A stretch of 64,000 bases of DNA from positions 62,001-126,000 of IMG/VR virus record IMGVR_UViG_3300019776_000324; one strand, 5' to 3'. Shown in pieces: positions 11,378 to 53,787 of this stretch. The notes beneath the pieces were generated by a model. That model saw nothing but the letters and a program-made list of their open reading frames with translations. It had not been told where the DNA came from and did no database searches. Position 1 is the first letter of the stretch, and each line of letters opens with the position of its first letter. Both the position numbers and the translations under genes were made by a program.

Positions 11378-11405
11378 TTGACAACTGGTTGACCTGTGTT
11401 ATAAT
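11378..11405 (+). promoter_or_regulatory. sigma70-type (early/middle) promoter for the gp55-gp47-gp46 operon
   Basis: TTGACA (11378-11383), 16 nt, TATAAT (11400-11405) with extended TG; AGGAG RBS at 11418-11422. Confidence 0.85.
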
Positions 11406-11430: not shown

Positions 11431-12342
11431 TTGGCCACAACATTTGCACCTAAAGTGGTAGTACCTAAAAACTACCTCAATAACAGAGATATCTTAAAAC
11501 AAATACATCTAAGCAAGAACACATATTGTACCTATTTAGATCCAGTTAACGATCACCAATACGATATTATTTTGCCTACTGTGGAGAAAATTAACCAGCG
11601 CACTATTGCTGAAGCTAGACGCAACAAAGCCGATAGACTCAAACGCGAAGGTGTTATTGTAGATCCTAAAAAGATTGCCAATACCGATTTAGTGTTTCGT
11701 ATTACTTGCTGGGAACACATACCAATGGCGCCTAAAAAAGTGCCAAAAACCACAGCTAAAAAGAAAAAAATTGAAGATATATTTGAGCTAGAACTTGAAG
11801 CAGAAGATCCACTAGCAGAGTTATTGGATATTCCTGTGTTGGATGAAAAGCATGTACGCTTGAACTTTCCTCCGTTTTATCACTATCGTTTAGACGAGAA
11901 TAAAGTGCCATTTTTAGTAGGCAAGAGTCACTGGAAAGGCGACTTAGAGCACGGTGAATTCAGCAAGGATCACGGTCAAACTACACGCACCTTAGCTACC
12001 ATGTACATGAAGCTGTGTGAACGCTATGCTACTCGCAGTAACTGGAGAGGATACACTTACAATGAAGAAATGCGTGGACAAGCTCTACTACAACTTAGCC
12101 AAATTGGTCTCCAGTTTGATGAATCAAAGTCTCAAAACCCATTTGCTTATTACACTGCCGCTATCACTAATAGTTTTACTCGTATTCTTAACTTAGAGAA
12201 AAAGAATCAAAACATTCGTGACGATATGCTAGAGCAAGCTGGATTGAATCCTTCATGGACTAGACAAAATGCCGGCAAGAAAGATCCTAATTTTGGATCT
12301 GTTGTTACTATCACAGCAGGCGAAGACTACGAAGCTCAATGA
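11431..12342 (+). CDS. gp55: Late-transcription sigma factor
   Basis: NYLNNRDIL N-terminus; NWRGYTYNEEM..ALLQL..FDESKSQNPFAYYTAAITNSF gp55 signature; TTG start 8 nt after AGGAG. Confidence 0.9.
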   Translation: MATTFAPKVVVPKNYLNNRDILKQIHLSKNTYCTYLDPVNDHQYDIILPTVEKINQRTIAEARRNKADRLKREGVIVDPKKIANTDLVFRITCWEHIPMAPKKVPKTTAKKKKIEDIFELELEAEDPLAELLDIPVLDEKHVRLNFPPFYHYRLDENKVPFLVGKSHWKGDLEHGEFSKDHGQTTRTLATMYMKLCERYATRSNWRGYTYNEEMRGQALLQLSQIGLQFDESKSQNPFAYYTAAITNSFTRILNLEKKNQNIRDDMLEQAGLNPSWTRQNAGKKDPNFGSVVTITAGEDYEAQ

Positions 12343-13484
12343 GTAAAACAGAAGTGTATTGCACTGCTCCTTGGAACGGATTAACCATCCGCGAAGATGG
12401 GCATGTGCGAACTTGCTGTGTAGGTTCAACCTCGTTGGGTAACTTAAACGAACAAACAATTGAATCTATTGAGTCTGGCCCAGTGCTAGCGGAACTACGG
12501 CAAGCAATGTTAAACTCTGAGCCGCATAGTACAAACTGCCAGGCCTGTATATCACACGAAGCTCATTCAGGGCTTGCATCGCTTCGGCAACACTATCTTC
12601 GTTATTATCCAAATACCGAACAATTAAAATTGCAATTTGTAGACATCAGATGGAATAATATTTGTAACCTGGGCTGTATGTATTGCGATTCAACTTTTAG
12701 TAGCACTTGGGCAACTCGAATGCCTGTTGCACAAAAAAATGTTCCAGTAAAGGTATATCAGGATGAATTGCTAGATTGGATACTTGATCGTTCTGCTGAT
12801 GTCAAGGAAATTATGTTAGTGGGTGGCGAACCCATGTTAATGAAACAAAATTATACTTTGTTGGCCAAATTGCCCTTGGATTCAAAAATTAGTATTATAA
12901 CCAACCTAAGCTACGATTTAGAAAATTTGCCTTGTTTGGATGATCTACTTAAACGGCCCAGAAACAATATCATTTGGAATATCAGTTTAGAAAACACTGA
13001 ACAACAATTTGAGTATGTTAGATCTGGTGCACAATGGTCGCAACTTGAAAAGAATTTAAAATATGTGTCTGACAGATGGCCGGTTACTATCAATGCTGTA
13101 TATTCGGTGTTTAGTGCGTTTACTCTAGTTGATACAGTTAAAGTTGCGCATCGTCTTGGTGTACAAAAGATGAATCTTGTACCTATTAATAAAAACACAT
13201 CTATGGACATGTACAACATGCCATTGGAAATAAAGAAAATAGCACTTGAACAACTGACCGAAGCGCAGGACTGGCATCAGAATCAGTTACACCCCGAGGA
13301 TCGATTTTTATATCCGCTTGTTGGGTTTGATGATTTGAAGAACATGTTGCAGGTTAGTCCAAAAAATCCTGTCACTTGGGCCAAATTCTATGACGGCGTT
13401 GAAAATTACGATAAATGGAGCCAAATTAAATTTCAAAATTTATGGCCAGAAGTATTTGAATTAATGAAAAAGTATTTGAAGTAA
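12339..13484 (+). CDS. Radical SAM enzyme with N-terminal SPASM/twitch-like domain
   Basis: CNLGCMYC (CxxxCxxC), GGEP motif; N-terminal CTAPW..TCC..CQAC. Confidence 0.88.
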   Translation: MSKTEVYCTAPWNGLTIREDGHVRTCCVGSTSLGNLNEQTIESIESGPVLAELRQAMLNSEPHSTNCQACISHEAHSGLASLRQHYLRYYPNTEQLKLQFVDIRWNNICNLGCMYCDSTFSSTWATRMPVAQKNVPVKVYQDELLDWILDRSADVKEIMLVGGEPMLMKQNYTLLAKLPLDSKISIITNLSYDLENLPCLDDLLKRPRNNIIWNISLENTEQQFEYVRSGAQWSQLEKNLKYVSDRWPVTINAVYSVFSAFTLVDTVKVAHRLGVQKMNLVPINKNTSMDMYNMPLEIKKIALEQLTEAQDWHQNQLHPEDRFLYPLVGFDDLKNMLQVSPKNPVTWAKFYDGVENYDKWSQIKFQNLWPEVFELMKKYLK

Positions 13485-13490
13485 CATCTC

Positions 13491-13519
13491 TTGCATTTGC
13501 GTTAACAATCGTTTACAAT
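13491..13519 (+). promoter_or_regulatory. sigma70-type promoter for gp47, probably near-leaderless
   Basis: TTGCAT, 17 nt, TACAAT; ATG 8 nt downstream with no SD. Confidence 0.6.
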
Positions 13520-13527
13520 ACACAATT

Positions 13528-14544
13528 ATGACAAATCTATTCCGCAAAACGGCCGTATGTACTGATATCCATTTTGGATTGAAATCAAACAGCCTAGTAC
13601 ACAATCAAGACTGTTCGGACTTTATCGACTGGTTTATTGCCACAGCCAAAGAACAAGGCTGTGAAACTGGCATGTTCCTAGGTGATTGGCATCACCATCG
13701 TGCCAGCATTAACTTGCAAACTCTGCACTTCAGTTTAAAAAGTTTACAGAAACTAAGTGCTGCATTTGATAATTTCTATTTTATTCCAGGAAATCATGAC
13801 TTGTACTACAGAGACAAGCGTGACATCCACGGTGCAGAATGGGCACAACACTTGCCTAATATACATGTCATCAATGATTGGTTCAGTGAAGGCGGAGTAA
13901 CTATTGCCCCATGGCTGGTAGGTGACGATCATAAAAAGATACAAAAACTAAACAGTCAGTATGTGTTTGGACACTTTGAACTGCCACACTTTAAAATGAA
14001 CGCCATGGTAGAGATGCCAGATCACGGTGAGATACATGTGGATCACTTTAGTGGTGTAGGCGAAGTATATTCTGGACACTTCCATTTACGACAAAACAAA
14101 CGCAACATCAACTATATTGGCAACTGCTTTCCGCATAACTTTGCTGACGCAGGTGACAGTAGTCGCGGCATGATGGTCCTAGAGTGGGGCAAGCCAGCAG
14201 AATATCACGCATGGCCAGGACAACCCTTGTATCGTGTGCTTAAACTGAGTCAGGTGATTGACAATGCTCCAAACATGTTGGCCAAGAATATGCATGTCAG
14301 AGTAGAACTAGACATTGATATCAGTTACGAAGAAGCTAACTTTATCAAAGAAACATTTGTTAAAGACTACAACTTAAGAGAAATGGCCTTGCTACCAGTT
14401 AAGAGCACCGCAGTCGATTTGGATCTCGCTCCGGGCGAAATCAAGTTTGAAAGCGTAGATCAAATTGTTACAGACCAAATTACTAATATCGAAAGTGAGT
14501 TTTACGATCCTAAGCTACTGTTAAAAATATATCAAAATCTATAA
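13528..14544 (+). CDS. gp47: Recombination endonuclease subunit (Mre11/SbcD-like)
   Basis: DIHFG, GDWHH, GNHD, GHFE, SGHFH metallophosphoesterase motifs. Confidence 0.95.
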   Translation: MTNLFRKTAVCTDIHFGLKSNSLVHNQDCSDFIDWFIATAKEQGCETGMFLGDWHHHRASINLQTLHFSLKSLQKLSAAFDNFYFIPGNHDLYYRDKRDIHGAEWAQHLPNIHVINDWFSEGGVTIAPWLVGDDHKKIQKLNSQYVFGHFELPHFKMNAMVEMPDHGEIHVDHFSGVGEVYSGHFHLRQNKRNINYIGNCFPHNFADAGDSSRGMMVLEWGKPAEYHAWPGQPLYRVLKLSQVIDNAPNMLAKNMHVRVELDIDISYEEANFIKETFVKDYNLREMALLPVKSTAVDLDLAPGEIKFESVDQIVTDQITNIESEFYDPKLLLKIYQNL

Positions 14545-16118
14545 TGATAGAAGATATCCTGTCAGACTTACAACAAAGATATGATTGCTCTAGTCCTATC
14601 TATTTGTCTGATTTTTTTCAGCCAGGCGGTGATCAACGACTTTACAATAAGTTAAAGGGATTGTATCAGCCGGCGTACGATAATCGATATCGAATAATAG
14701 TCGTACAAGATTGTGCTGACATACATGATTACAAGGATTTGCCTGGAAGAGCTATTGTTGCTCTTCAAAAATATGCCAGCCAAATTGATATTTCTAATTT
14801 TTTTATTTTGTTACTAACCAGTAACAATATGGAATCTGAATTGGAAACAGCCAGAACTCTGTATTCATCTGATGAGTGTGCTATACGCACAGAATTGATT
14901 GATAATTTACCCTTGGTGGAGTTGCCTACAGATGCACAAGATACATTCTGTGTGCTTCCGTGGATGCACTTGTATATTGGGCCCGATGGTAATATTTTAC
15001 CATGCTGTGTTGCTGATCAAAAATTTCCAATTGGCAACATAAAGGATCAGTCTATCACCGATATAGTGACTTCTGATAAATTTAATCGCATTAGATCTAA
15101 TATGATCCAGGGCTTGCGCAGTAAAGAATGCTCGTATTGTTATGACCAAGAAGATTCTAAAATAACAAGCCTGCGCTCACAGCATAATAAAAAATATCCT
15201 TCTATTTCTGCCAAGTCAGTCAAGCATGACGGAACCATTGATCAATTTGAGCCAATTGATCTTGACATACGATTGAACAACATTTGTAATCTTAAATGTC
15301 GCATGTGTAGTGGATATTTTAGTAGTGCTATTGCACAAGAAGAAGCAGAATTGTTCGGCAATACTGATTCTGTTAATGCTTCTTTACGATTACAACAAAG
15401 AAAATCCAAATTTTCTGAAATAGTAGAGTATCTGCCGTCTACTGAAAAAATTTACTTTGCCGGGGGCGAGCCCTTGCTAGCCAGTGAACACTACGAAATT
15501 CTAAAATATCTAATTGACTGCGGTAATACTGATTTGGAAATTGCTTACAATACCAATTTTACTACATTACAATATCGCGATATTAGTGTGCTAGATTTAT
15601 GGAAACACTTTTCCAATGTTACTGTTGGTGCTAGCCTTGATGCCTGTGGCCCGGTTGCTGAGTATGTACGACACGGTACTAATTGGGCAACTATAGAATC
15701 AAATTTAAAATTATTAAAAACTCAATGCCCAACTGTAAATTTTAGAGTAGCATCAACTATAGGATTATTAAATGTCCAAAGTCTGATTGAGTTACAACAA
15801 ACCTGGCACACTAATCAACTGCTTGATATTTCAAAATTTTCAATGACTACCATGATCGAACCTGCGCACTTGACAGTTCGAGTTTTACCCACGCATCATA
15901 AACAACGGCTGGAGGCACTAATTACTGCTCATATCAAATGGTGCCAGAGTAATTCTGCCATTAGTCTTGCAAATCAATGGCAAGACCTGTTAAACTACAT
16001 GTGGTCCGAAGATCACAGTCACTATTTAGATGACTTTAAACGATTGACCATATCACTAGATGCTCATAGAAAAGAGTCTCTGTTGATTGCAGTACCCGAA
16101 CTTAGCGACTTATTATGA
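14544..16118 (+). CDS. Radical SAM enzyme with twitch/SPASM domain and an extra ~130-aa N-terminal domain
   Basis: FCVLPW..PCC..CSYC, then CNLKCRMC, AGGEP, YNTN. Confidence 0.88.
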   Translation: MIEDILSDLQQRYDCSSPIYLSDFFQPGGDQRLYNKLKGLYQPAYDNRYRIIVVQDCADIHDYKDLPGRAIVALQKYASQIDISNFFILLLTSNNMESELETARTLYSSDECAIRTELIDNLPLVELPTDAQDTFCVLPWMHLYIGPDGNILPCCVADQKFPIGNIKDQSITDIVTSDKFNRIRSNMIQGLRSKECSYCYDQEDSKITSLRSQHNKKYPSISAKSVKHDGTIDQFEPIDLDIRLNNICNLKCRMCSGYFSSAIAQEEAELFGNTDSVNASLRLQQRKSKFSEIVEYLPSTEKIYFAGGEPLLASEHYEILKYLIDCGNTDLEIAYNTNFTTLQYRDISVLDLWKHFSNVTVGASLDACGPVAEYVRHGTNWATIESNLKLLKTQCPTVNFRVASTIGLLNVQSLIELQQTWHTNQLLDISKFSMTTMIEPAHLTVRVLPTHHKQRLEALITAHIKWCQSNSAISLANQWQDLLNYMWSEDHSHYLDDFKRLTISLDAHRKESLLIAVPELSDLL

Positions 16119-17878
16119 TACAAATTAAAAATTTAACTGTTCGTAACTTTATGAGTGTAGGTAACGCTACACAAGCTGTGGACTTTGATCGTAACGATCT
16201 TACACTGGTACTAGGCGAGAACTTGGACTTAGGCGGTGACGGAAGTCGTAACGGAACAGGTAAAACTACAATTATCAATGCTCTTAGTTACGCCTTGTAC
16301 GGACAAGCATTAAGTAATATTCGCAAAGACAATCTAGTTAACAAGACCAACGGCAAAGGCATGTTGGTAAGTTTGGATTTTGTTGTTGGCAATCAAGAAT
16401 ATAAGATTGAGCGTGGTCGCAAGCCCAATGTACTTAGGTTCTATGTCAACAACAAAGAACAAGAAATTACAGATGATGCACAAGGCGATTCAAGAGAAAC
16501 ACAAGAAGCTATTGAACATACCCTAGGGCTTAGTCATGACATGTTCAAGCATATCCTAGCACTCAATACTTACACAGAACCGTTTTTAAGTTTAAAAGCC
16601 AACGATCAGCGTACAATTATTGAGCAGTTGTTAGGTATTACCATGCTGTCAGAACGGGCAGACAAGATCAAAGAGCTTAATAAATCTACTAAAGATGGAA
16701 TAACACAAGAAGAGTTTCGTATTCGTGCTGTGCAAGAAGCTAACAAGCGCATTGAAGAACAAATTACGGCACTCAAGCGTAGACAAACAATGTGGACCGA
16801 CAAGCATGAGCAAGATATCAAGGAACTTGAGAAGGCCTTATCGTCGTTACAGAATATACAGATTGAAGACGAGATTAGAGCGCACAAAGATCATAAGGAA
16901 TGGGATCAAAAGCGCAAGGACATCAATGAACTTTCGTCGCAGATCAGCAGAACGAAACTGGACATCAGCCGGGAGGAAAAGCTGGTTGCCAAACTATCTA
17001 AAGAACTCGAGACGCTTTCAAAACACGAATGTCATACATGCGGTCAGTCCTTTCACGACAGTAAGCACCAACAAGTTTTGGAAGCGAAACAGAAGGATCT
17101 GGCAGTGGCAAGAGAAAACTGCCAAGCTCATAGCACCCTGTTATCAGAACTACAGGTTGCCCACGACTCCCTGGGCCCGTTAGGAAAACCTCCTACCATG
17201 TTCTACGACAAAGAAGAAGATGCAATACATCATCAGGCTACTTTAACCAACTTAGAAAAACAAATTGCTGAAAAATCCACAGAGGTAGACCCTTATGGAG
17301 AGCAAATTGAAGAAATGCAACAGCAAGCCCTACAGGAGGTAACATATGACACACTTAATGAACTTACTCGCTTACAAGAACATCAAGAGTTCTTGCTCAA
17401 ACTACTCACAAGCAAAGACTCGTTTATCCGTAAAAAAATTATTGAACAAAATCTTAGCTATCTAAATGCTAGACTAACACACTACTTAGATCGTGTGGGC
17501 TTGCCGCATACTGTGGTATTCCAAAACGATCTGACTGTCAGCATCGAAGAGCTAGGTCGTGAGCTGGACTTTGATAACTTATCTAGAGGTGAACGCAATC
17601 GTTTGATCTTGAGTATGAGCTGGGCATTCCGTGATGTGTTTGAAAGCCTGTATCAGCCTATTAACTTGTTGTTTATAGATGAAATGATTGACAACGGATT
17701 GGATACACAAGGTGTTGAAAGCAGTCTAGCATTACTAAAACAAATGAGCCGTGAACGACACAAGAGTATTTGGCTAGTAAGTCACAGAGATGAACTTGCT
17801 GGTCGTGTAGAGAACATACTCAAAGTTGTTAAGGAAAACGGCTTTACAAGTTACAACACGGATGTAGAAATAGCGTGA
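16115..17878 (+). CDS. gp46: Recombination ATPase subunit (Rad50/SbcC-like)
   Basis: Walker A NGTGKTT, CHTC zinc hook in coiled coil, LSRGE signature, FIDE Walker B, VSH. Confidence 0.95.
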   Translation: MIQIKNLTVRNFMSVGNATQAVDFDRNDLTLVLGENLDLGGDGSRNGTGKTTIINALSYALYGQALSNIRKDNLVNKTNGKGMLVSLDFVVGNQEYKIERGRKPNVLRFYVNNKEQEITDDAQGDSRETQEAIEHTLGLSHDMFKHILALNTYTEPFLSLKANDQRTIIEQLLGITMLSERADKIKELNKSTKDGITQEEFRIRAVQEANKRIEEQITALKRRQTMWTDKHEQDIKELEKALSSLQNIQIEDEIRAHKDHKEWDQKRKDINELSSQISRTKLDISREEKLVAKLSKELETLSKHECHTCGQSFHDSKHQQVLEAKQKDLAVARENCQAHSTLLSELQVAHDSLGPLGKPPTMFYDKEEDAIHHQATLTNLEKQIAEKSTEVDPYGEQIEEMQQQALQEVTYDTLNELTRLQEHQEFLLKLLTSKDSFIRKKIIEQNLSYLNARLTHYLDRVGLPHTVVFQNDLTVSIEELGRELDFDNLSRGERNRLILSMSWAFRDVFESLYQPINLLFIDEMIDNGLDTQGVESSLALLKQMSRERHKSIWLVSHRDELAGRVENILKVVKENGFTSYNTDVEIA

Positions 17879-18888
17879 CATTAGCAACCTGGCACTTCCA
17901 TATTGAGATATCAAGCAAGTGTACCTTGCGTTGTCCTCGGTGCGCACGACAAGAAGTGCCAGACAGTTTGATCAATACCGAATTAGATTTAGAGTTTTTC
18001 AAACGCAACTTTACTGAAAAATTTATTTTGGATAATGTTGAGAAGATCACATTCTGCGGCGATGACGGTGATCCTATCTATGCACACGATCTTATTCCTG
18101 TAATTGATTATATCAAACGCATTAAGCCTGTACAAATTGTTATTATTACCAACGGTTCACACAAAAAGCCAGAATGGTGGCGTGGACTTGGTAGTGTATT
18201 AACTTCTCAAGATACTGTACATTTTAGTATAGATGGCTGGGATAACGAATCCAACAATCTGTATAGGGTCAACAGTGATTTTAACAGCATACTCGAAGGT
18301 GTAGCCAATCTGCGTTCAACTAGTAGTTGCAGAACAGTTTGGGCTGCTATTGCATTCAAGTTTAACGAAGATCATATCACCAACATAGTATCTATGGCGC
18401 AAAGCTACGGGTTTGATGCTGTACAGTTTACAAAGAGTACTAAGTTTGGTAGTGTATATCCAAGTTATGGCAACGATGATCCGCTTGAACCTAGTAGAAA
18501 GTTTGTTAGCAGCTCGCATAGATTTGAAAGAGATGTTATACTGTTAAGCTCGCGTGGGTTACATCCATCTGTAGATGTAAAGAATATTGAACTGTATAAA
18601 TCAGTTAAAGAAGTAAATGGCGTTAAACCGCTATGTGAGATTGGAAACAAAGGACTGTATATTGATGCTCGCGGTAGATTGTTTCCGTGTTGCTGGGTAG
18701 CTAATCGTTACGCACACAATACAGAATGGCAACAGCTTGCTAATCAATTTGACCTCAATCAAAGAACATTAACAGATGTATTAGTAGATCCGTTTTGGAC
18801 AACAGAATTTAAAACATTTAAGTGGCAAGAGTGTCAAAACAAGTGTAATGCCAAGAAAGTGGACGAAAAATATGCAACTCAGTGGTGA
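17875..18888 (+). CDS. Radical SAM enzyme with C-terminal SPASM-like Cys cluster
   Basis: CTLRCPRC, GDDGDP, ITNG; C-terminal C..FPCCW..CQNKC. Confidence 0.88.
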   Translation: MTLATWHFHIEISSKCTLRCPRCARQEVPDSLINTELDLEFFKRNFTEKFILDNVEKITFCGDDGDPIYAHDLIPVIDYIKRIKPVQIVIITNGSHKKPEWWRGLGSVLTSQDTVHFSIDGWDNESNNLYRVNSDFNSILEGVANLRSTSSCRTVWAAIAFKFNEDHITNIVSMAQSYGFDAVQFTKSTKFGSVYPSYGNDDPLEPSRKFVSSSHRFERDVILLSSRGLHPSVDVKNIELYKSVKEVNGVKPLCEIGNKGLYIDARGRLFPCCWVANRYAHNTEWQQLANQFDLNQRTLTDVLVDPFWTTEFKTFKWQECQNKCNAKKVDEKYATQW

Positions 18889-18906: not shown

Positions 18907-19335
18907 ATGGTATGGCTGTATGAAAACACTCAAATTGAAACTTTACCCGAAGATTGTGTCGGCTTTGTTTATTTGATCACAAATAACATCTCTGGCAGAA
19001 AGTATATTGGAAAGAAATTAGCAAAATTTAGTAAGACAACATACAAAGTAGTAAAATTAAAGAACGGCAACAAGAAGCGCAAGAAAATTAAAAGTAAAAT
19101 AGATTCAGACTGGCAGCTATACTATGGAAGCAACGATCAACTCAACAAAGACATTGCAGAGCTAGGCTCAGACAACTTCACAAGAGAAATATTATTTTAT
19201 TGTAAATCAAAAGCAGAATGCAGTTATGTAGAAGCTAGAGAACAATTTAATCATAGAGTATTAGAATCAGATGACTATTACAATGGGCAGATAGTTTGCC
19301 GCATACACGGTAGTCACATAAAAAACAAAATTTAG
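18907..19335 (+). CDS. Compact GIY-YIG (Seg-like) endonuclease
   Basis: GFVYLITN..GRKYIGKK, YYGS, FTREIL, EAREQ, YYNG; strongly basic insert KLKNGNKKRKKIKSK; 142 aa. Confidence 0.85.
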   Translation: MVWLYENTQIETLPEDCVGFVYLITNNISGRKYIGKKLAKFSKTTYKVVKLKNGNKKRKKIKSKIDSDWQLYYGSNDQLNKDIAELGSDNFTREILFYCKSKAECSYVEAREQFNHRVLESDDYYNGQIVCRIHGSHIKNKI

Positions 19336-28989: not shown

Positions 28990-30186
28990 ATGTCACAAGA
29001 ATTATTAGAAGGTCGTTGGACCGAAACTAAAGATGCATTGCTAGAAGGCCTACAAGGTTCAAAGCGTACATCGATGTCAGTAATCCTCGAAAACACAAAG
29101 AAGTATTTGAAAGAGAACGCAAGTTCTGGTTCAACTGCATCTGGTAACATCGCTACATTAAACCGTGTGATTCTTCCAGTTATCCGTCGTGTTATGCCAA
29201 CTGTTATTGCTAACGAGTTGGTTGGTGTTCAGCCTATGACTGGCCCAGTTGGTCAAATCCATACTTTGCGTGTTCGTTACGCACAGTCATTGAATGATCA
29301 ATCTGCTGCTGCAACTTCTGTTGCTGCTGGTTCAGAAGCATTGAGCCCATTCAATATTGCAACTGCATATTCCACAGTACCACAAAATACTACTACAGCT
29401 ACTGGCTATACTGGTAACAATACTGCTACTATGGAAGGTACAGGCGGTAAGCAAATTTCCGTACAGATCTTGAAACAAGCTGTTGAAGCTAAGACACGCA
29501 AGTTACAAGCTCGTTGGACATTTGAATCTGCTCAAGATGCACAAGCTATGCACGGTATCGATGTAGAAGCTGAAATCATGGCTGCTCTTGCACAAGAGAT
29601 CACAGCTGAGATCGATCAAGAGATCCTCTTGAGCTTGTCTACATTGGCTGCTACTGAGTACACATACAACCAAGCTACTGTATCTGGTACTGCTACATTC
29701 GTTGGTGACGAACACGCTGCTTTAGCTGTTCTTATCAACCGTGTTGCTAACTTGATCGCTCAGCGTACACGTCGTGGCGCTGGTAACTGGGCTGTTGTTT
29801 CTCCAGCTTCATTGACAGTATTGCAATCTGCAACAACTTCAGCTTTTGCTCGCACAACAGAAGGCACTTTCGAAGCACCTACAAACACTAAGTTTGTTGG
29901 TACATTGAACGGCGCAATGCGTGTGTTTGTAAACAGCTACGCTCAAGATACAGCGTCTGTATTGGTTGGTTACAAAGGTACATCAGAAGCTGATGCTCCT
30001 GCGTTCTATTGCCCATACATTCCTTTGATGAGCTCAGGCGTTGTATTAGATCCATCAACTTTCGAACCAGTAGTGTCATTCATGACACGCTACGGTTTCG
30101 TAGAGTTAACCAACACAGCATCAAGCTTCGGTAACGCAGCTGACTATGTTGGCGAGATCGCAGTACAAAACTTGTCATTCTCTTAA
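28990..30186 (+). CDS. gp23: Major capsid protein
   Basis: RRVMPTVIANELVGVQPMTGPVGQI, VEAKTRKLQARWT.E.AQD, FYCPYIPL, TFEP..SFMTRYG. Confidence 0.97.
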   Translation: MSQELLEGRWTETKDALLEGLQGSKRTSMSVILENTKKYLKENASSGSTASGNIATLNRVILPVIRRVMPTVIANELVGVQPMTGPVGQIHTLRVRYAQSLNDQSAAATSVAAGSEALSPFNIATAYSTVPQNTTTATGYTGNNTATMEGTGGKQISVQILKQAVEAKTRKLQARWTFESAQDAQAMHGIDVEAEIMAALAQEITAEIDQEILLSLSTLAATEYTYNQATVSGTATFVGDEHAALAVLINRVANLIAQRTRRGAGNWAVVSPASLTVLQSATTSAFARTTEGTFEAPTNTKFVGTLNGAMRVFVNSYAQDTASVLVGYKGTSEADAPAFYCPYIPLMSSGVVLDPSTFEPVVSFMTRYGFVELTNTASSFGNAADYVGEIAVQNLSFS

Positions 30187-30230
30187 TCCGAGAAGAAAAG
30201 AATCATCCTACCCTTTGGGATGGGAAGAGC

Positions 30231-30256
30231 AAAAAAGCACCGCAAGGTGCTTTTTT
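30231..30256. terminator. Bidirectional intrinsic terminator after gp23
   Basis: AAAAAAGCACC-GCAA-GGTGCTTTTTT between convergent genes. Confidence 0.9.
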
Positions 30257-30273
30257 GTTGACTACATTTTTGT

Positions 30274-50953: not shown

Positions 50954-52099
50954 ATGGCTAAATCAAACGAAATTAAAAGACTGAACCCTAAGGGTGCTGA
51001 AACCAAATATGTTGGCTTTGAACCTGAGTGGAAATTCCAACCCACAGAAGAAAATCGTGTTAGCAGTCTTGCTAATGCATTTCAATGGTACAACTATCAC
51101 TATGGCAAAAAAGATGCCAAAGAAATGTTGTGCCATTATCTAGAACACAATGGCCGTAAAGTGGATGCCAAGACCATGCGTGGTATTCCAGACAGTCAAA
51201 TTCGTGTGACGCCAGCTTGGGTTTGTCGTATGACATTGATTGGACTAGTGCTCAATGAACACGAGCAGAGCATCATTGACGAACAAATTAGTGCCATGCT
51301 TAAAGTCAAGCAAGAAAAGAAAAAAGAACAGTCCGAAGTTGATGCCGACAATGCTGTGGCAAAATTAACAATTCAAGATCACCTGCGTGAAAAGATCAGT
51401 GAATGTTGTGGCGAACTAGAAGGCATGTTTGATGATTTTGTTGTAGCTGGCGCTAAAATGTCAGCAGACTTTAAGCCTATTGCACTCATGCGCGGCATGA
51501 ATATCAGTCCCAACATGATTGGCACAGTATCTAAAGTTTGGGAATTGCGCCTGGAAGAATTCAATGAAGTATTAACTGGCGAAGATGATCAACTAGTAGA
51601 AGGGTATAGCCACCTCTCTAAGAATCAATTAAAGCAGTGCGTTAAGTTTTGCGAAACAGTAATTAACGATTGCAACAGCTATGTTCAGCTCAAGAAAGTA
51701 GAGCGCAAACCTCGTGCTAAGAAAGCAGTAAGCCCAGAAAAACTCACACGCAAATTCAAGTTCTTGAAAGAGTTTGATGAACTTAAACTTAAATCCGAAC
51801 CAGTTACCAAGCTAGTTAATGCATCAGAGGCTTGGCTTTATGACACAGCCAAGCGTAAACTAATACATGTCATGGCAGATAGTCATATTGGAACATTCAC
51901 AGTCAAGGGCAGTGCTATTGTAGGATTTGATGCACAAACAACAGTACAAAAAACCCTACGCAAGCCAGCAGAATCGATTAAAGCAGTTACAGGTGGAGGC
52001 AAGCCAGCGGCTCGTAAAGCATTTGCTGAAATCAAAGCTACGGAAACCAAGTACAACGGGCGAGGCAACGAAAACTTAATCATACTATGGGCTTGGTAA
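50954..52099 (+). CDS. T4-like phage hypothetical protein
   Basis: 381 aa; WYNY N-terminus; C-terminal LYDT.KRKL..Y/H.A....VKG....FD...QKTLRKP....NGR.N...IIL pattern recalled from T4-like phages. Confidence 0.7.
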   Translation: MAKSNEIKRLNPKGAETKYVGFEPEWKFQPTEENRVSSLANAFQWYNYHYGKKDAKEMLCHYLEHNGRKVDAKTMRGIPDSQIRVTPAWVCRMTLIGLVLNEHEQSIIDEQISAMLKVKQEKKKEQSEVDADNAVAKLTIQDHLREKISECCGELEGMFDDFVVAGAKMSADFKPIALMRGMNISPNMIGTVSKVWELRLEEFNEVLTGEDDQLVEGYSHLSKNQLKQCVKFCETVINDCNSYVQLKKVERKPRAKKAVSPEKLTRKFKFLKEFDELKLKSEPVTKLVNASEAWLYDTAKRKLIHVMADSHIGTFTVKGSAIVGFDAQTTVQKTLRKPAESIKAVTGGGKPAARKAFAEIKATETKYNGRGNENLIILWAW

Positions 52100-52110: not shown

Positions 52111-52992
52111 ATGTACCAAATTCCTACCAAAGTAGATTTTTATATAACCAATGTTTGTAATCTAACCTGCCAAAATTGTAATAGATTTAATAATTTTAAT
52201 TTTAAAGGCTGGCAGGATTGGAAAGAATATGAGCCCATTTATGAACAATGGGGACAACTAGTTGGGCTCCGTGCTATTACAATCATGGGCGGAGAGCCGT
52301 TTCTTAACCCTACTCTCAAAGAATGGATCTCTGGGTTAAATCGTATATTTGGCATAGAAGTACAAGTGCTAACCAACGGCACTAGATTCCTACAAACTCC
52401 TGGAGTGTACGATAGTATGCTTTGGAAAAACCCTACCAATCAAATGCAAAATCACATAGGAGTTAGTTTACATACTCCAGAGGATTTTGAACAAATTAGA
52501 TCAGACATACACGAGTTCCTTCAAGGTACTGTAACAGAATACAGCAAGGATGAAAATCCCTGGGGAGCTGATTGGCAATTTCAAGATAGCAATGGTGTAA
52601 TGATCAATGTTTATACTGTGGATGAATTTTTTGATTCAGCAGTAACATCCAACAACGGTGTATATACCCTACACAATAACGATCCAGAACAAGCTCACAA
52701 TAATTGCGCTTTTGTAAAATGGAAAAGTTATCATTTTATTCGTGGAAAATTTTACAAGTGCGGCCCTAGTGCGTTACTACCGGAGTTTGACACCCAATAT
52801 CAACTAGATATTTCAGACGAAGATCGAAAGATACTGCACTCGTACCAGCCATTATCTGTGGACAATTTTAGCGAATACCACGAAGAATTTTTTGCTAATC
52901 TGGATAATCCTATTGCACAATGTAAGTTTTGTTCAGTAAACACAAGCAAAGCAAAAATCTATCCTATCAGGAAAGGTTCTAAATCTAACTAA
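52111..52992 (+). CDS. Radical SAM enzyme (fourth in the window)
   Basis: CNLTCQNC, GGEPFLNP, LTNG, C-terminal C..YKC..CKFC; ATG 4 nt after TAAGTA. Confidence 0.85.
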   Translation: MYQIPTKVDFYITNVCNLTCQNCNRFNNFNFKGWQDWKEYEPIYEQWGQLVGLRAITIMGGEPFLNPTLKEWISGLNRIFGIEVQVLTNGTRFLQTPGVYDSMLWKNPTNQMQNHIGVSLHTPEDFEQIRSDIHEFLQGTVTEYSKDENPWGADWQFQDSNGVMINVYTVDEFFDSAVTSNNGVYTLHNNDPEQAHNNCAFVKWKSYHFIRGKFYKCGPSALLPEFDTQYQLDISDEDRKILHSYQPLSVDNFSEYHEEFFANLDNPIAQCKFCSVNTSKAKIYPIRKGSKSN

Positions 52993-53016: not shown

Positions 53017-53787
53017 ATGGGCATTGAACAACAAAACAGCTTAGACTCACTAAAACAGAATTTATTTGAATATGTTCGCTATCAACTAGGCGATCAAATC
53101 ATTGATCTTGAATTAGATGCTGAACACTTTGAAACTGCTTACCGCGGTACAATTGGGACCTATCGTCAGCGAGCACAAAACGCTTACGAAGAAAGTTATA
53201 CTTTCATGGAGTTGGTTACCAATGTTAACATCTATGAATTACCTCAAGAAGTTCAATCAGTGCGTCAAATTTTCCGTAGAACTTTTGGCGATAGCACAGG
53301 TCCATTTGCTAGTAACTTTGACCCATTCAGTCAAGCAAGTTTAAATGTCTACTTGATGAACTTTAATGTGGCAGGTGGTCTTGCTACTTACGATTTCTAT
53401 TCACAATATGTAGAGCTCGCAGGCCGTATGTTTGGCGCCTACATGAACTACACATTCAATCCTGTAACTAAAAAGCTACAACTAATCCGTGACCCAAAAG
53501 GCACTGGCGAAAATGTCCTGCTTTGGACCTACAACTTTAAACCAGAATTCAACATGCTGAGCGATCCATTGATTGCACAGTGGATTCGTAATTATATGGT
53601 TGGCAACTGCAAACTTATAATCGGTGAAGCCCGTGAAAAGTTTGGTACAATTGCTGGCCCACAAGGTGGCGGCACTCTAAACGGCACAGCAATGAAGTCT
53701 GAAGGCATGGCAATCATGCAACAGGGCATTGAAGATCTTAAGAACTATGTAGATGGTTCACAGCCGTTGACCTGGGTAATTGGTTAA
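53017..53787 (+). CDS. gp13: Neck protein
   Basis: LG..IIDLELD..H, WIRNY....K..IGEAREKF..I.GP.GG.TLNG..M. Confidence 0.9.
   Translation: MGIEQQNSLDSLKQNLFEYVRYQLGDQIIDLELDAEHFETAYRGTIGTYRQRAQNAYEESYTFMELVTNVNIYELPQEVQSVRQIFRRTFGDSTGPFASNFDPFSQASLNVYLMNFNVAGGLATYDFYSQYVELAGRMFGAYMNYTFNPVTKKLQLIRDPKGTGENVLLWTYNFKPEFNMLSDPLIAQWIRNYMVGNCKLIIGEAREKFGTIAGPQGGGTLNGTAMKSEGMAIMQQGIEDLKNYVDGSQPLTWVIG

What the first reader, a model, noticed from the sequence alone, without database searches (positions are those of the whole stretch)
11431..18888. Three different radical SAM/SPASM genes alternate with gp55, gp47 and gp46; a fourth precedes gp13
Seen: the order is gp55-rSAM-gp47-rSAM-gp46-rSAM, mostly joined by ATGA/TAATG/GTGA overlaps, and another rSAM sits at 52111-52992. 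All have CxxxCxxC plus auxiliary Cys clusters, but the architectures differ: two have the twitch/SPASM domain N-terminal (permuted) and two have the Cys cluster C-terminal. No precursor peptide or cofactor pathway is adjacent. Known: gp47 and gp46 are normally close neighbours, and SPASM/twitch enzymes usually modify peptides or proteins. Inference: an expanded, dispersed phage rSAM family that inserts between core genes much as homing endonucleases do, possibly a modification toolkit for virion proteins, glycans or nucleotides.
Basis: partly seen in the sequence, partly recalled or inferred. Interest (0 to 1): 0.65.

Follow-up and report, generated by a model that had tools for sequence, protein, structure and literature searches.

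The report
Swappable radical-SAM gene cassettes in jumbo phage
A 344-kb freshwater jumbo phage carries 15 radical-SAM enzyme genes, four of them wedged between core genes at junctions that hold different cargo in nearly every related phage; they most likely tailor unusual sugars, and no member of the main family has been tested in a laboratory.

Summary
The order is gp55-rSAM1-gp47-rSAM2-gp46-rSAM3, followed by a GIY-YIG nuclease. The genes are joined by ATGA, TAATG, ATGA and GTGA overlaps. rSAM4 sits in front of gp13.

rSAM1 and rSAM2 belong to NCBIfam NF033640, which has the auxiliary-cluster (twitch) domain at the N-terminus. rSAM3 and rSAM4 have it at the C-terminus. None reaches the QueE, NrdG, MoaA or viperin cut-offs, and the genome has no NrdD or TGT.

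The genome holds 15 such genes, 12 with the N-terminal twitch architecture, plus IscU and two A-type Fe-S carriers. Five relatives hold 12-16 each.

In 83 relatives the three junctions carry 166 cargo ORFs in 91 families. 36% have the CxxxCxxC motif. The closest relative has all three junctions empty. Cargo content shows almost no signal on the tree of the flanking genes. The "inserts like homing endonucleases" pattern is therefore supported, but the rSAM genes encode no nuclease.

On function, the phage's main rSAM array lies among an NDP-sugar dehydratase, a DegT aminotransferase, an amidinotransferase, a carbamoyltransferase and GT-like genes, next to fibre-like genes. Cultured pelagiphages and cyanophages have similar modules. 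I infer radical tailoring of sugars. The substrate and the target are not shown.

The parts
11378..11405 (+). sigma-70-like promoter (TTGACA-16-TATAAT, TG-extended) in front of the gp55-to-SegE gene string
   Evidence: 12 of 12 matches. No terminator-like site on the + strand until after 19335, so the seven genes probably form one operon (inference).
11431..12342 (+). gp55-like late sigma factor (core gene, left anchor of slot 1)
   Evidence: phrog_12791 E 7e-72. 68-92% identical in relatives.
12339..13484 (+). rSAM1: N-terminal-twitch radical SAM enzyme, cargo of the gp55|gp47 slot
   Evidence: SPASM domain at residues 8-70, Radical_SAM at 107-254, NF033640 220 bits (cut-off 170). The slot is empty in 58 of 73 relatives, and none of them has an orthologue here.
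13528..14544 (+). gp47 (SbcD/Mre11-like nuclease subunit), core anchor
   Evidence: Metallophos, phrog_100 E 2e-55. At least 599 relatives in IMG/VR.
14544..16118 (+). rSAM2: N-terminal-twitch radical SAM enzyme with an extra 130-residue alpha/beta N-terminal domain, cargo of the gp47|gp46 slot
   Evidence: NF033640 381 bits. More than 100 orthologues at 56-69% identity. AF2 model pLDDT 91.6. The slot is empty in 22 of 67 relatives.
16115..17878 (+). gp46 (SbcC/Rad50-like ATPase subunit), core anchor
   Evidence: phrog_77 E 2e-102. 54% identical to the Pseudomonas phage PA5oct homologue.
17875..18888 (+). rSAM3: radical SAM enzyme with a C-terminal twitch domain, cargo of the gp46|SegE slot
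   Evidence: Radical_SAM at residues 10-149, SPASM at 254-324 (E 0.002). No NCBIfam family above its cut-off. Orthologues up to 85% identical. The slot is empty in 22 of 59 relatives.
18907..19335 (+). SegE-type GIY-YIG nuclease domain protein (142 aa), present at this position in 59 of the 67 relatives with both gp47 and gp46
   Evidence: PF19835 E 9e-33. Present at 38-95% identity, mostly 70-95%.
50954..52099 (+). 381-aa conserved phage protein, left anchor of the rSAM4 slot
   Evidence: phrog_11903 E 1.5e-66.
52111..52992 (+). rSAM4: short radical SAM enzyme with C-terminal twitch-like cysteines, cargo of the slot before gp13
   Evidence: Radical_SAM at residues 12-130. No family above its cut-off. 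Orthologues up to 89% identical. The slot is empty in 48 of 64 relatives and holds rSAM4 homologues in 13.
53017..53787 (+). gp13-like head-tail adaptor, right anchor of the rSAM4 slot
   Evidence: phrog_211 E 4.5e-23.

Best explanation
The four genes are cargo cassettes. They belong to a clade-wide pool of radical-SAM tailoring enzymes carried by uncultured freshwater jumbo phages of about 340 kb.

Chemistry (by family analogy, not measured). Each enzyme binds SAM at a CxxxCxxC [4Fe-4S] cluster, makes a 5'-deoxyadenosyl radical and abstracts a hydrogen atom from its substrate. A second cluster, ligated by four cysteines in the twitch domain, would take or give the electron.

Substrate (inference from gene context). 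I infer sugars: NDP-aminosugars, or sugar residues of a glycan. The phage would build the basic sugar with its own 4,6-dehydratase, DegT aminotransferase and glycosyltransferase-like proteins. It would then decorate the sugar with amidino and carbamoyl groups and with radical chemistry such as oxidation, epimerisation, deoxygenation or C-C/C-methyl chemistry.

Destination (weakest step). The glycan would most likely end up on virion fibres or on the host envelope.

Genome dynamics (shown). The cassettes sit exactly between core genes, with start and stop codons overlapping, so they ride on the core genes' transcription. Related phages carry different cargo at the same junctions, and each cargo family stays at its own junction. 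They are therefore most likely exchanged by recombination in the conserved flanks (inferred). This makes enzyme content, and presumably glycan structure, differ from strain to strain.

Support functions. The phage's own IscU and two A-type carriers would supply the Fe-S clusters.
For: Enzyme identity:
- Pfam and NCBIfam assignments.
- Invariant cluster cysteines and GGE motif across 54 homologues.
- A confident AF2 model whose only PDB matches are radical-SAM cores, with BlsE (a sugar-nucleoside decarboxylase) first.
- The twitch domain matches BtrN, a sugar dehydrogenase.

Sugar context in this genome. Within 22-44 kb lie:
- an NDP-sugar epimerase/dehydratase (146 bits) and a DegT aminotransferase (198 bits);
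- an amidinotransferase (PDB AGAT/StrB1, E 1e-11);
- a carbamoyltransferase (162 and 111 bits);
- five N_Twi rSAMs;
- proteins whose confident half matches GT-B glycosyltransferases at Z 8.5-9.9, with an Atlas lead to GT10;
- a fibre-like gene and a 4718-aa ORF next door.

The same association elsewhere:
- pelagiphage Mosig: three rSAMs, DegT, carbamoyltransferase, methyltransferase and epimerase;
- marine virus AG-345-D19: amidinotransferase, carbamoyltransferase and rSAM within 8 kb;
- cyanophage S-SCSM2R: amidinotransferase beside KdsA/KdsB, a GT and a sulfotransferase;
- cellular genomes: arrays of 2-8 paralogues with carbamoyltransferase, B12-rSAM, GT2 and an ABC ATPase, and an NDP-hexose 2,3-dehydratase in Poseidonocella.

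Cassette behaviour.

Clade-wide load of 12-16 rSAMs per genome.

Fe-S supply: IscU 177 bits, two Fe-S_biosyn proteins at 75 and 69 bits.

Precedent in print: PMC5332604 and PMC7029224.
Against: - No substrate, product or expression was observed.
- The four window genes are not next to sugar genes. Their link to the sugar cluster is paralogy at 20-37% identity, so different paralogues may act on different substrates.
- One cellular locus (L018) pairs the family with PhyH, WelO5-like and methyltransferase genes. That looks like small-molecule tailoring rather than glycan synthesis.
- The GT assignment rests on a poor model (pLDDT 55) and middling Z-scores.
- The sulfotransferase and 2OG-oxygenase readings of two cluster genes are my own motif readings. 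Pfam and PHROGs did not confirm them.
- Several 'MAG' loci turned out to be phage contigs, so some of the 'cellular' context may be viral.
- The destination of the glycan is a guess from proximity to fibre-like genes.
Confidence: 0.45

Rival explanations
1. DNA or nucleotide hypermodification toolkit. The rSAMs, glycosyltransferase-like proteins, amidinotransferase and carbamoyltransferase decorate phage DNA bases, or sugars attached to them, to escape restriction. Cassette turnover would diversify the modification.
For: - The cargo slots lie inside the replication and recombination module. Besides gp55/47/46, rSAMs abut primase-helicase, the clamp loader and DNA polymerase.
- T4 alpha- and beta-glucosyltransferases are among the fold matches of the GT-like protein, both at Z 8.6.
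- A small GIY-YIG nuclease is conserved next door.
- Radical SAM enzymes are known in thymidine hypermodification (PMC5889632, PMC8989533).
- From my own knowledge, T4 carries its DNA alpha-glucosyltransferase between genes 47 and 55.
Against: - No ThyA-fold hydroxymethylase and no TGT/DpdA are present in the genome.
- The pathway genes (4,6-dehydratase, DegT, carbamoyl- and amidinotransferases) are typical of glycan aminosugars, and they lie beside fibre-like genes.
- Known DNA pathways use one rSAM, not 12-16.
Confidence: 0.2
2. Peptide or protein maturases (RiPP-like). The twitch rSAMs cross-link, epimerise or oxidise residues of phage structural proteins or of small secreted peptides.
For: - Most characterised SPASM/twitch enzymes act on peptides.
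- The fold and profile matches include SkfB, CteB, SuiB and anSME.
- rSAM4 sits in the structural module before gp13.
- The phage encodes ClpP directly upstream of one paralogue.
Against: - Pfam and NCBIfam found no peptide-recognition (RRE/PqqD-like) domain.
- I saw no small precursor-like ORF conserved beside the cassettes, but I did not search for one systematically.
- The recurrent neighbours are sugar enzymes.
Confidence: 0.15
3. A diffusible small molecule. The cluster and its satellites would make an aminoglycoside-like or nucleoside-like metabolite, used against competitors or to manipulate the host.
For: - The enzyme set has parallels in aminoglycoside and nucleoside antibiotic pathways. 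BtrN-like twitch domain, StrB1-like amidinotransferase and BlsE as best fold match were found here. The parallel between this carbamoyltransferase family and TobZ is from my own knowledge, as is the role of B12-rSAMs in such pathways; B12-rSAMs do occupy the same slots.
- One cellular locus has PhyH, WelO5-like and methyltransferase tailoring genes and an ABC ATPase.
- PMC12801897 makes this suggestion for a cyanophage.
Against: - No scaffold-forming enzyme (cyclitol synthase, PKS or NRPS) was seen among the roughly 90 proteins scanned.
- Multiple glycosyltransferase-like genes and the position next to fibre-like genes fit a polymeric or protein-bound glycan better.
Confidence: 0.1

Closest known systems
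NCBIfam NF033640 (N_Twi_rSAM, twitch domain-containing radical SAM protein)
   Same: rSAM1 (220 bits) and rSAM2 (381 bits) pass the curated cut-off of 170. So do eight other genes of this genome. They share the same domain order and conserved cysteines.
   Different: My literature searches found no characterised member. rSAM2 adds a 130-residue N-terminal domain. rSAM3 and rSAM4 are not members. They carry the twitch domain C-terminally.
BtrN and other sugar-acting twitch/SPASM radical SAM enzymes (BlsE)
   Same: A radical SAM core plus one auxiliary cluster. The rSAM2 twitch region matches the BtrN twitch domain (E 1e-5). BlsE is the best fold match. The gene context is sugar-related.
   Different: The domain order is permuted, with the twitch domain before the core. 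Similarity is weak (TM 0.28/0.43, 18% identity), and no activity is known.
Radical SAM cassettes and Fe-S genes in marine T4-like phages (Nishimura 2017, PMC5332604; Zaragoza-Solas 2020, PMC7029224)
   Same: One T4-like environmental genome has 12 rSAM genes plus an A-type carrier. Two near-identical pelagimyophages differ by rSAM gene cassettes in a glycosyltransferase-rich hypervariable region.
   Different: Those were gene-content remarks only. Here the phages are freshwater jumbo phages of about 340 kb, the cassettes sit at defined junctions between replication and recombination core genes, the family is identified, and the turnover is quantified.
Hyperplastic regions and free-standing homing endonuclease genes of T4-type phages
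   Same: Gene-sized insertions between conserved core genes. Presence or absence varies among close relatives. Each insert is faithful to its site.
   Different: The rSAM cargo has no nuclease. The neighbouring GIY-YIG gene was present in 59 of the 67 relatives with both gp47 and gp46, not sporadic. No repeated boundary element was looked for beyond the start/stop overlaps.
QueE, NrdG, MoaA and viperin (housekeeping or antiviral radical SAM families)
   Same: The common radical SAM core gives partial matches to these families.
   Different: The scores of 15-37 bits are far below the curated cut-offs of 131-325. The partner genes NrdD and TGT are absent.

Membership tests
Radical SAM superfamily (PF04055) | CxxxCxxC cluster motif and a Pfam score above the gathering threshold (29.5 bits) | tested here: met
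   37.9, 40.9, 37.7 and 41.7 bits for rSAM1-4. The motifs lie at residues 109, 248, 16 and 17. The GGE(P) SAM-binding motif is invariant in the N-twitch alignment.
NF033640 N_Twi_rSAM | Whole-protein score above the curated cut-off of 170 bits | tested here: met
   Met for rSAM1 (220.3) and rSAM2 (381.3). Not met for rSAM3 (no hit) or rSAM4 (19.2 bits). Genome-wide, 10 genes are above the cut-off and 2 more give long matches below it.
NF033640 N_Twi_rSAM | Twitch (single auxiliary cluster) domain N-terminal to the radical SAM core | tested here: met
   SPASM Pfam domain at residues 8-70 (rSAM1) and 136-199 (rSAM2), before the core. The pattern C-x17-CC-x40-CxxC is conserved.
SPASM domain proteins (two auxiliary clusters) | Seven-cysteine motif binding two extra [4Fe-4S] clusters | tested here: not met
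   Only 4-5 cysteines lie in the auxiliary domain of each of the four proteins. This fits twitch, not full SPASM.
QueE / NrdG / MoaA | Score above the NCBIfam equivalog cut-off, and a pathway partner in the genome | tested here: not met
   best scores are 35.7 (QueE, cut-off 260), 23.8 (NrdG2, cut-off 131) and 32.7 (MoaA, cut-off 284). No NrdD and no TGT in the genome.
Viperin-like antiviral rSAM (NF038283) | Score above 180 bits | tested here: not met
   26.7-37.2 bits.
RiPP maturases of the SPASM/twitch group | Peptide-recognition domain and an adjacent precursor peptide gene | tested here: inconclusive
   Pfam and NCBIfam found no RRE/PqqD-like domain, and I saw no conserved small ORF beside the cassettes. 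The absence of a Pfam hit does not exclude a divergent recognition domain.
Homing-endonuclease-type mobile genes | Presence/absence polymorphism at a fixed site between conserved genes | tested here: met
   the slots are empty in 22-58 relatives. Each slot holds 22-25 different contents, with at least 34-37 changes on the flank tree.
Homing-endonuclease-type mobile genes | The mobile gene itself encodes a site-specific nuclease | tested here: not met
   the rSAM proteins contain only radical SAM and twitch domains. The GIY-YIG gene is separate and was present in 59 of the 67 relatives with both gp47 and gp46.

The most novel reading that the evidence does not exclude
The N-terminal-twitch radical SAM family is a new class of oxygen-independent sugar-editing enzymes. 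This clade of jumbo phages would use a recombining pool of such cassettes, together with amidino-, carbamoyl- and glycosyltransferases and its own Fe-S assembly proteins. The result would be strain-specific glycans on virion fibres, or on the host surface or phage DNA. That would be a hypervariable viral 'glyco-code' comparable to the clade-specific fibril glycosylation of giant viruses.
Probability: 0.3. Interest if true: 0.8.

Novelty: new variant of a known kind. Interest (0 to 1): 0.62.

Why it matters
Radical SAM enzymes are costly and oxygen-sensitive. A virus that keeps 12-16 of them, plus its own Fe-S assembly proteins, must gain something important from them.

The main family has a curated model, but I found no tested member. 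At least 599 related phage contigs carry the same gene block.

The junctions give a natural experiment. Near-identical core genes flank dozens of alternative enzymes. This points to an arms-race function, namely surface or DNA chemistry seen by hosts, competitors or grazers.

It also offers a large catalogue of candidate enzymes for new sugar chemistry.

Finally, it shows that cargo exchange in jumbo phages can be precise to the codon and faithful to its site without a transposase or a homing nuclease in the cargo.

Tried and rejected
- **False lead.** I first concluded that rSAM2 is fixed between gp47 and gp46, because loci fetched through rSAM2 orthologues all had it. That was ascertainment bias. 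Loci fetched through gp47 show the slot empty in 22 of 67.
- **Mis-binned contigs.** I took loci L017 and L020 ('Haliscomenobacter' MAG) as evidence of transfer from a host, because their clusters are 45-82% identical to the phage's. Both contigs carry gp46 at 70-76% identity, so they are phage contigs binned into the MAG. L013 and L050 are probably phage contigs too.
- **Searches that gave nothing.**
  - Megablast of the region against cultured phages found no match.
  - PHROGs gave nothing useful for the cluster proteins.
  - A PDB profile search for the GT-like family gave only chance hits.
  - No flavodoxin, SAM synthetase, ThyA-fold enzyme, NrdD or TGT is present.
  - The PhyH search is uninformative because its control rang nowhere.
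  - The search for related loci with the 12-paralogue alignment failed for lack of a conserved stretch.
- **Weak results.**
  - The AF2 model of the GT-like protein is poor (pLDDT 55). Only its C-terminal half was usable.
  - hhalign of the rSAM3 C-terminus against the N-twitch profile gives only 54% probability over 30 columns. It supports the permutation but does not prove it.
- **Reads.** Only short contigs from one freshwater study matched, and there was no RNA run. Expression is untested, and the sample may be the source of the window.
- **Unconfirmed motif readings.** I read genome 40680-41327 as a sulfotransferase and 29719-30264 as a 2OG oxygenase. No tool confirmed either.
Full report
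**1. What is in the window**

The window is bases 62001-126000 of a 344,244-bp IMG/VR virus record with direct terminal repeats.

On the + strand the ORFs run as follows:
- gp55-like sigma factor, 11431-12342
- rSAM1, 12339-13484
- gp47, 13528-14544
- rSAM2, 14544-16118
- gp46, 16115-17878
- rSAM3, 17875-18888
- a 142-aa SegE-type GIY-YIG protein, 18907-19335

rSAM4 (52111-52992) lies between a conserved 381-aa protein and the gp13-like adaptor. Pfam and PHROGs confirm every assignment.

A perfect sigma-70-like promoter lies at 11378-11405. No terminator-like site follows on this strand until after the nuclease gene, so the seven genes look like one operon. That is an inference.

By gp46, the closest cultured relatives are Pseudomonas phage PA5oct (54%), Sinorhizobium phage Phosso, Agrobacterium phage Atu_ph07 and the GAP32 group. 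There is no nucleotide-level match to any cultured phage.

**2. What the four proteins are**

rSAM1 and rSAM2 pass the curated cut-off of NCBIfam NF033640, 'twitch domain-containing radical SAM protein', at 220 and 381 bits against a cut-off of 170. In both, the SPASM/twitch Pfam domain lies in front of the radical SAM core.

rSAM3 and rSAM4 have the core first and a cysteine pattern of the same type (C-x17-C(C)-x45-53-Cx2-3C) at the C-terminus. A profile comparison aligns the rSAM3 C-terminal hairpin with the N-terminal twitch hairpin of rSAM2, at E 1e-4 and 54% probability.

With 4-5 cysteines, the auxiliary domain fits a one-cluster twitch domain rather than a full SPASM domain.

No protein comes near the cut-offs for QueE, NrdG, MoaA or viperin.

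An AlphaFold2 model of rSAM2 is confident (pLDDT 91.6). Its PDB matches are only generic radical SAM cores: BlsE first, then SkfB, GDGT-MAS, anSME and MoaA, with TM of at most 0.32 by query. No solved structure has this architecture. In the ESM Atlas the nearest clusters are viral 'twitch domain-containing radical SAM' families.

**3. The four are part of a much larger set**

The genome has 13 Radical_SAM Pfam hits and 15 ORFs with CxxxCxxC.
- Twelve share the N-twitch architecture. Ten are above the NF033640 cut-off and two below it.
- Three have the C-terminal arrangement.
- Paralogues are only 19-37% identical, but the cluster cysteines, the GGE motif and a few other residues are invariant.
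- None of 14 reference cellular genomes has a member above the cut-off.

Five related phage records carry 12-16 Radical_SAM hits each. This includes the closest relative, whose three junctions are empty.

The phage also encodes IscU (177 bits) with an adjacent A-type carrier, and a second A-type carrier elsewhere. This matches an earlier remark about a marine T4-like genome with 12 rSAM genes and Fe-S assembly genes (PMC5332604).

**4. The junctions are swappable slots**

I fetched 80 IMG/VR loci through gp47 (74-96% identical; at least 599 exist). With three loci fetched earlier, I tabulated what lies between the anchors.

| Slot | Loci with both anchors | Empty | With at least one rSAM | Other content |
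|---|---|---|---|---|
| gp55\|gp47 | 73 | 58 | 4 (none orthologous to rSAM1) | unknown ORFs |
| gp47\|gp46 | 67 | 22 | 15 | amidinotransferase-like, GT-like, AMP-ligase plus TctC, unknown ORFs |
| gp46\|SegE | 59 | 22 | 26 (37 rSAM ORFs, including B12-binding rSAMs) | unknown ORFs |
| 381-aa protein\|gp13 | 64 | 48 | 13 (rSAM4 homologues) | 3 with other ORFs |

The closest relative (gp47 96% identical, gp46 88%) is empty at all three junctions of the gp55-gp46 block. The alignment breaks exactly at the start/stop overlaps.

On a gp47+gp46 tree of 67 phages, the gp47|gp46 slot has 25 different contents and needs at least 37 changes. Presence of an rSAM (16 phages) needs 15 changes, the same as shuffled labels (mean 14.6). 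The gp46|SegE slot has 22 contents and at least 34 changes.

The 166 cargo ORFs fall into 91 families at 45% identity. Of these ORFs, 59 (36%) carry CxxxCxxC, against 15 of 445 ORFs genome-wide. Every family is confined to one slot, except one 59%-identical pair.

Elsewhere in the genome, other paralogues also abut core genes: primase-helicase, ClpP, the clamp loader and DNA polymerase.

My reading is as follows. These are cargo slots whose content is exchanged between co-infecting relatives by recombination in the conserved flanks. Selection keeps the translational coupling intact. The pattern resembles homing, but the cargo has no nuclease. The neighbouring GIY-YIG gene was present in 59 of the 67 relatives with both gp47 and gp46. 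Whether it promotes the exchange is open.

An early impression that rSAM2 is fixed was an artefact of choosing loci by rSAM2.

**5. What they probably do**

The window gives no clue to function, but the rest of the genome does. Five N-twitch paralogues form an array at genome 32.9-40.7 kb. The surrounding genes are:
- an NDP-sugar epimerase/4,6-dehydratase and a DegT/StrS-type sugar aminotransferase;
- an amidinotransferase, matching AGAT and the streptomycin inosamine-phosphate amidinotransferase at E 1e-11 to 1e-10;
- a NodU/TobZ-type carbamoyltransferase;
- four paralogues of a protein whose confidently modelled half matches GT-B glycosyltransferases (EXT1/2, OGT, FUT11, FUT9 and the T4 glucosyltransferases at Z 8.5-9.9; Atlas lead to GT10);
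- three proteins with DxD-like motifs (one weak GT2 hit);
- next to these, a fibre-like gene and a 4718-aa ORF.

Members of these families also appear as cargo at the gp47|gp46 slot in relatives.

The same association recurs in other phages:
- Pelagibacter phage Mosig has three rSAMs beside a sugar aminotransferase, a carbamoyltransferase, a methyltransferase and an epimerase. One of these rSAMs is 28% identical to rSAM3, with the twitch part as a separate ORF. Another has the layout of rSAM4.
- A marine single-virus contig has amidinotransferase, carbamoyltransferase and an N-twitch rSAM within 8 kb.
- Cyanophage S-SCSM2R has the amidinotransferase beside KdsA/KdsB, a glycosyltransferase, 2OG oxygenases and a sulfotransferase (PMC12801897).
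- Pelagimyophages are reported to differ by rSAM cassettes inside a glycosyltransferase-rich host-recognition region (PMC7029224).

In cellular genomes the family also forms arrays of 2-8 paralogues. The neighbours include carbamoyltransferase, B12-rSAM, GT2 and an ABC ATPase, and in Poseidonocella an NDP-hexose 2,3-dehydratase. One Saprospiraceae locus looks more like small-molecule tailoring, with PhyH, WelO5-like and methyltransferase genes.

I therefore take radical tailoring of aminosugars or glycans as the most likely function (confidence 0.45). The steps stand as follows:
- The radical chemistry is inferred from the family.
- The sugar substrate is inferred from gene context.
- The glycan's destination (virion fibres or host envelope) is the weakest step.

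The rivals are DNA hypermodification (0.2), peptide or protein maturation (0.15) and a diffusible metabolite (0.1).

**6. Habitat and expression**

Short contigs 95-99% identical to pieces of rSAM1, gp47, rSAM2 and gp46 occur in four runs of one freshwater metagenome study. Some pieces bridge rSAM1|gp47 and rSAM2|gp46. The study may be the source of the window, so this is not independent support. No RNA run held the stretch, so expression is untested.

**7. Novelty and verdict**

The family has a curated model, and rSAM cassettes and rSAM-rich T4-like genomes have been mentioned in print.

What is new here:
- the identification of the cargo as mainly the uncharacterised N-twitch family;
- the scale of 12-16 genes per genome across a large freshwater jumbo-phage clade;
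- the codon-precise, slot-faithful and phylogenetically scrambled cassette behaviour at junctions between replication and recombination core genes;
- the recurrent link to an aminosugar, amidino- and carbamoyl-transfer pathway.

I rate it a new variant of a known kind, with interest 0.62.

Noticed in passing
genome G000:C1:163553-164222 and 248639-248941 (outside the window): The phage encodes an IscU-type Fe-S scaffold with an adjacent A-type carrier, and a second A-type carrier 3.3 kb downstream of another rSAM gene.
   Followed up: partly
L017 and L020 (NZ_JBBAKG010000001.1 and NZ_JBBAKG010000003.1, 'Haliscomenobacter sp.' MAG in RefSeq): Both contigs (183 kb and 148 kb) carry gp46 at 70-76% identity and the whole rSAM/carbamoyltransferase cluster. 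They are jumbo-phage contigs binned into a bacterial MAG. This is at most a weak host hint.
   Followed up: partly
window 18907-19335: The SegE-type GIY-YIG protein is only 142 aa. It was present at the same position in 59 of the 67 relatives with both gp47 and gp46 (mostly 70-95% identity), so it behaves as a core gene rather than a sporadic homing endonuclease. Its role is open: host DNA degradation, or promoting exchange at the neighbouring slot.
   Followed up: partly
window 14544-14940 (rSAM2 residues 1-130): rSAM2 and its orthologues carry an extra alpha/beta N-terminal domain. It is confidently modelled (block pLDDT 84-94) and has no Pfam match. It was not searched on its own.
   Followed up: no
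genome 35392-36852 (C-terminal 45 residues) and 243955-245337 (N-terminal 60 residues): Two paralogues carry a similar short extension with a motif like DP-x-WP...F..LP..I..E, at opposite ends of the protein (alignment). Its meaning is unknown.
   Followed up: no
genome 47769-61925, minus strand (ends just before the window): A single 4718-aa ORF lies next to a fibre-like gene and the sugar cluster. This recalls the giant VrlC-type proteins that border host-recognition regions of cyanomyophages and pelagimyophages (PMC7029224). It was not analysed.
   Followed up: no
L137, L143, L151 (gp55 of 626-640 aa) and L001 (gp46 of 693 aa): Some relatives have a double-length gp55 ORF, or a gp46 that is 100 residues longer. 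These may be fusions or insertions within core genes.
   Followed up: no
genome 42574-42843, minus strand: An 89-aa, very basic, Cys-rich ORF (CSVFSCGNPNCIFC) lies inside the sugar/rSAM cluster. It was not tested as a possible peptide substrate or zinc-ribbon protein.
   Followed up: no
L078, L082, L095, L104, L113, L116, L144 (slots gp47|gp46 and gp46|SegE): A recurrent three-gene cassette of about 150, 190 and 290 aa with no Pfam match occupies either slot in several relatives.
   Followed up: partly
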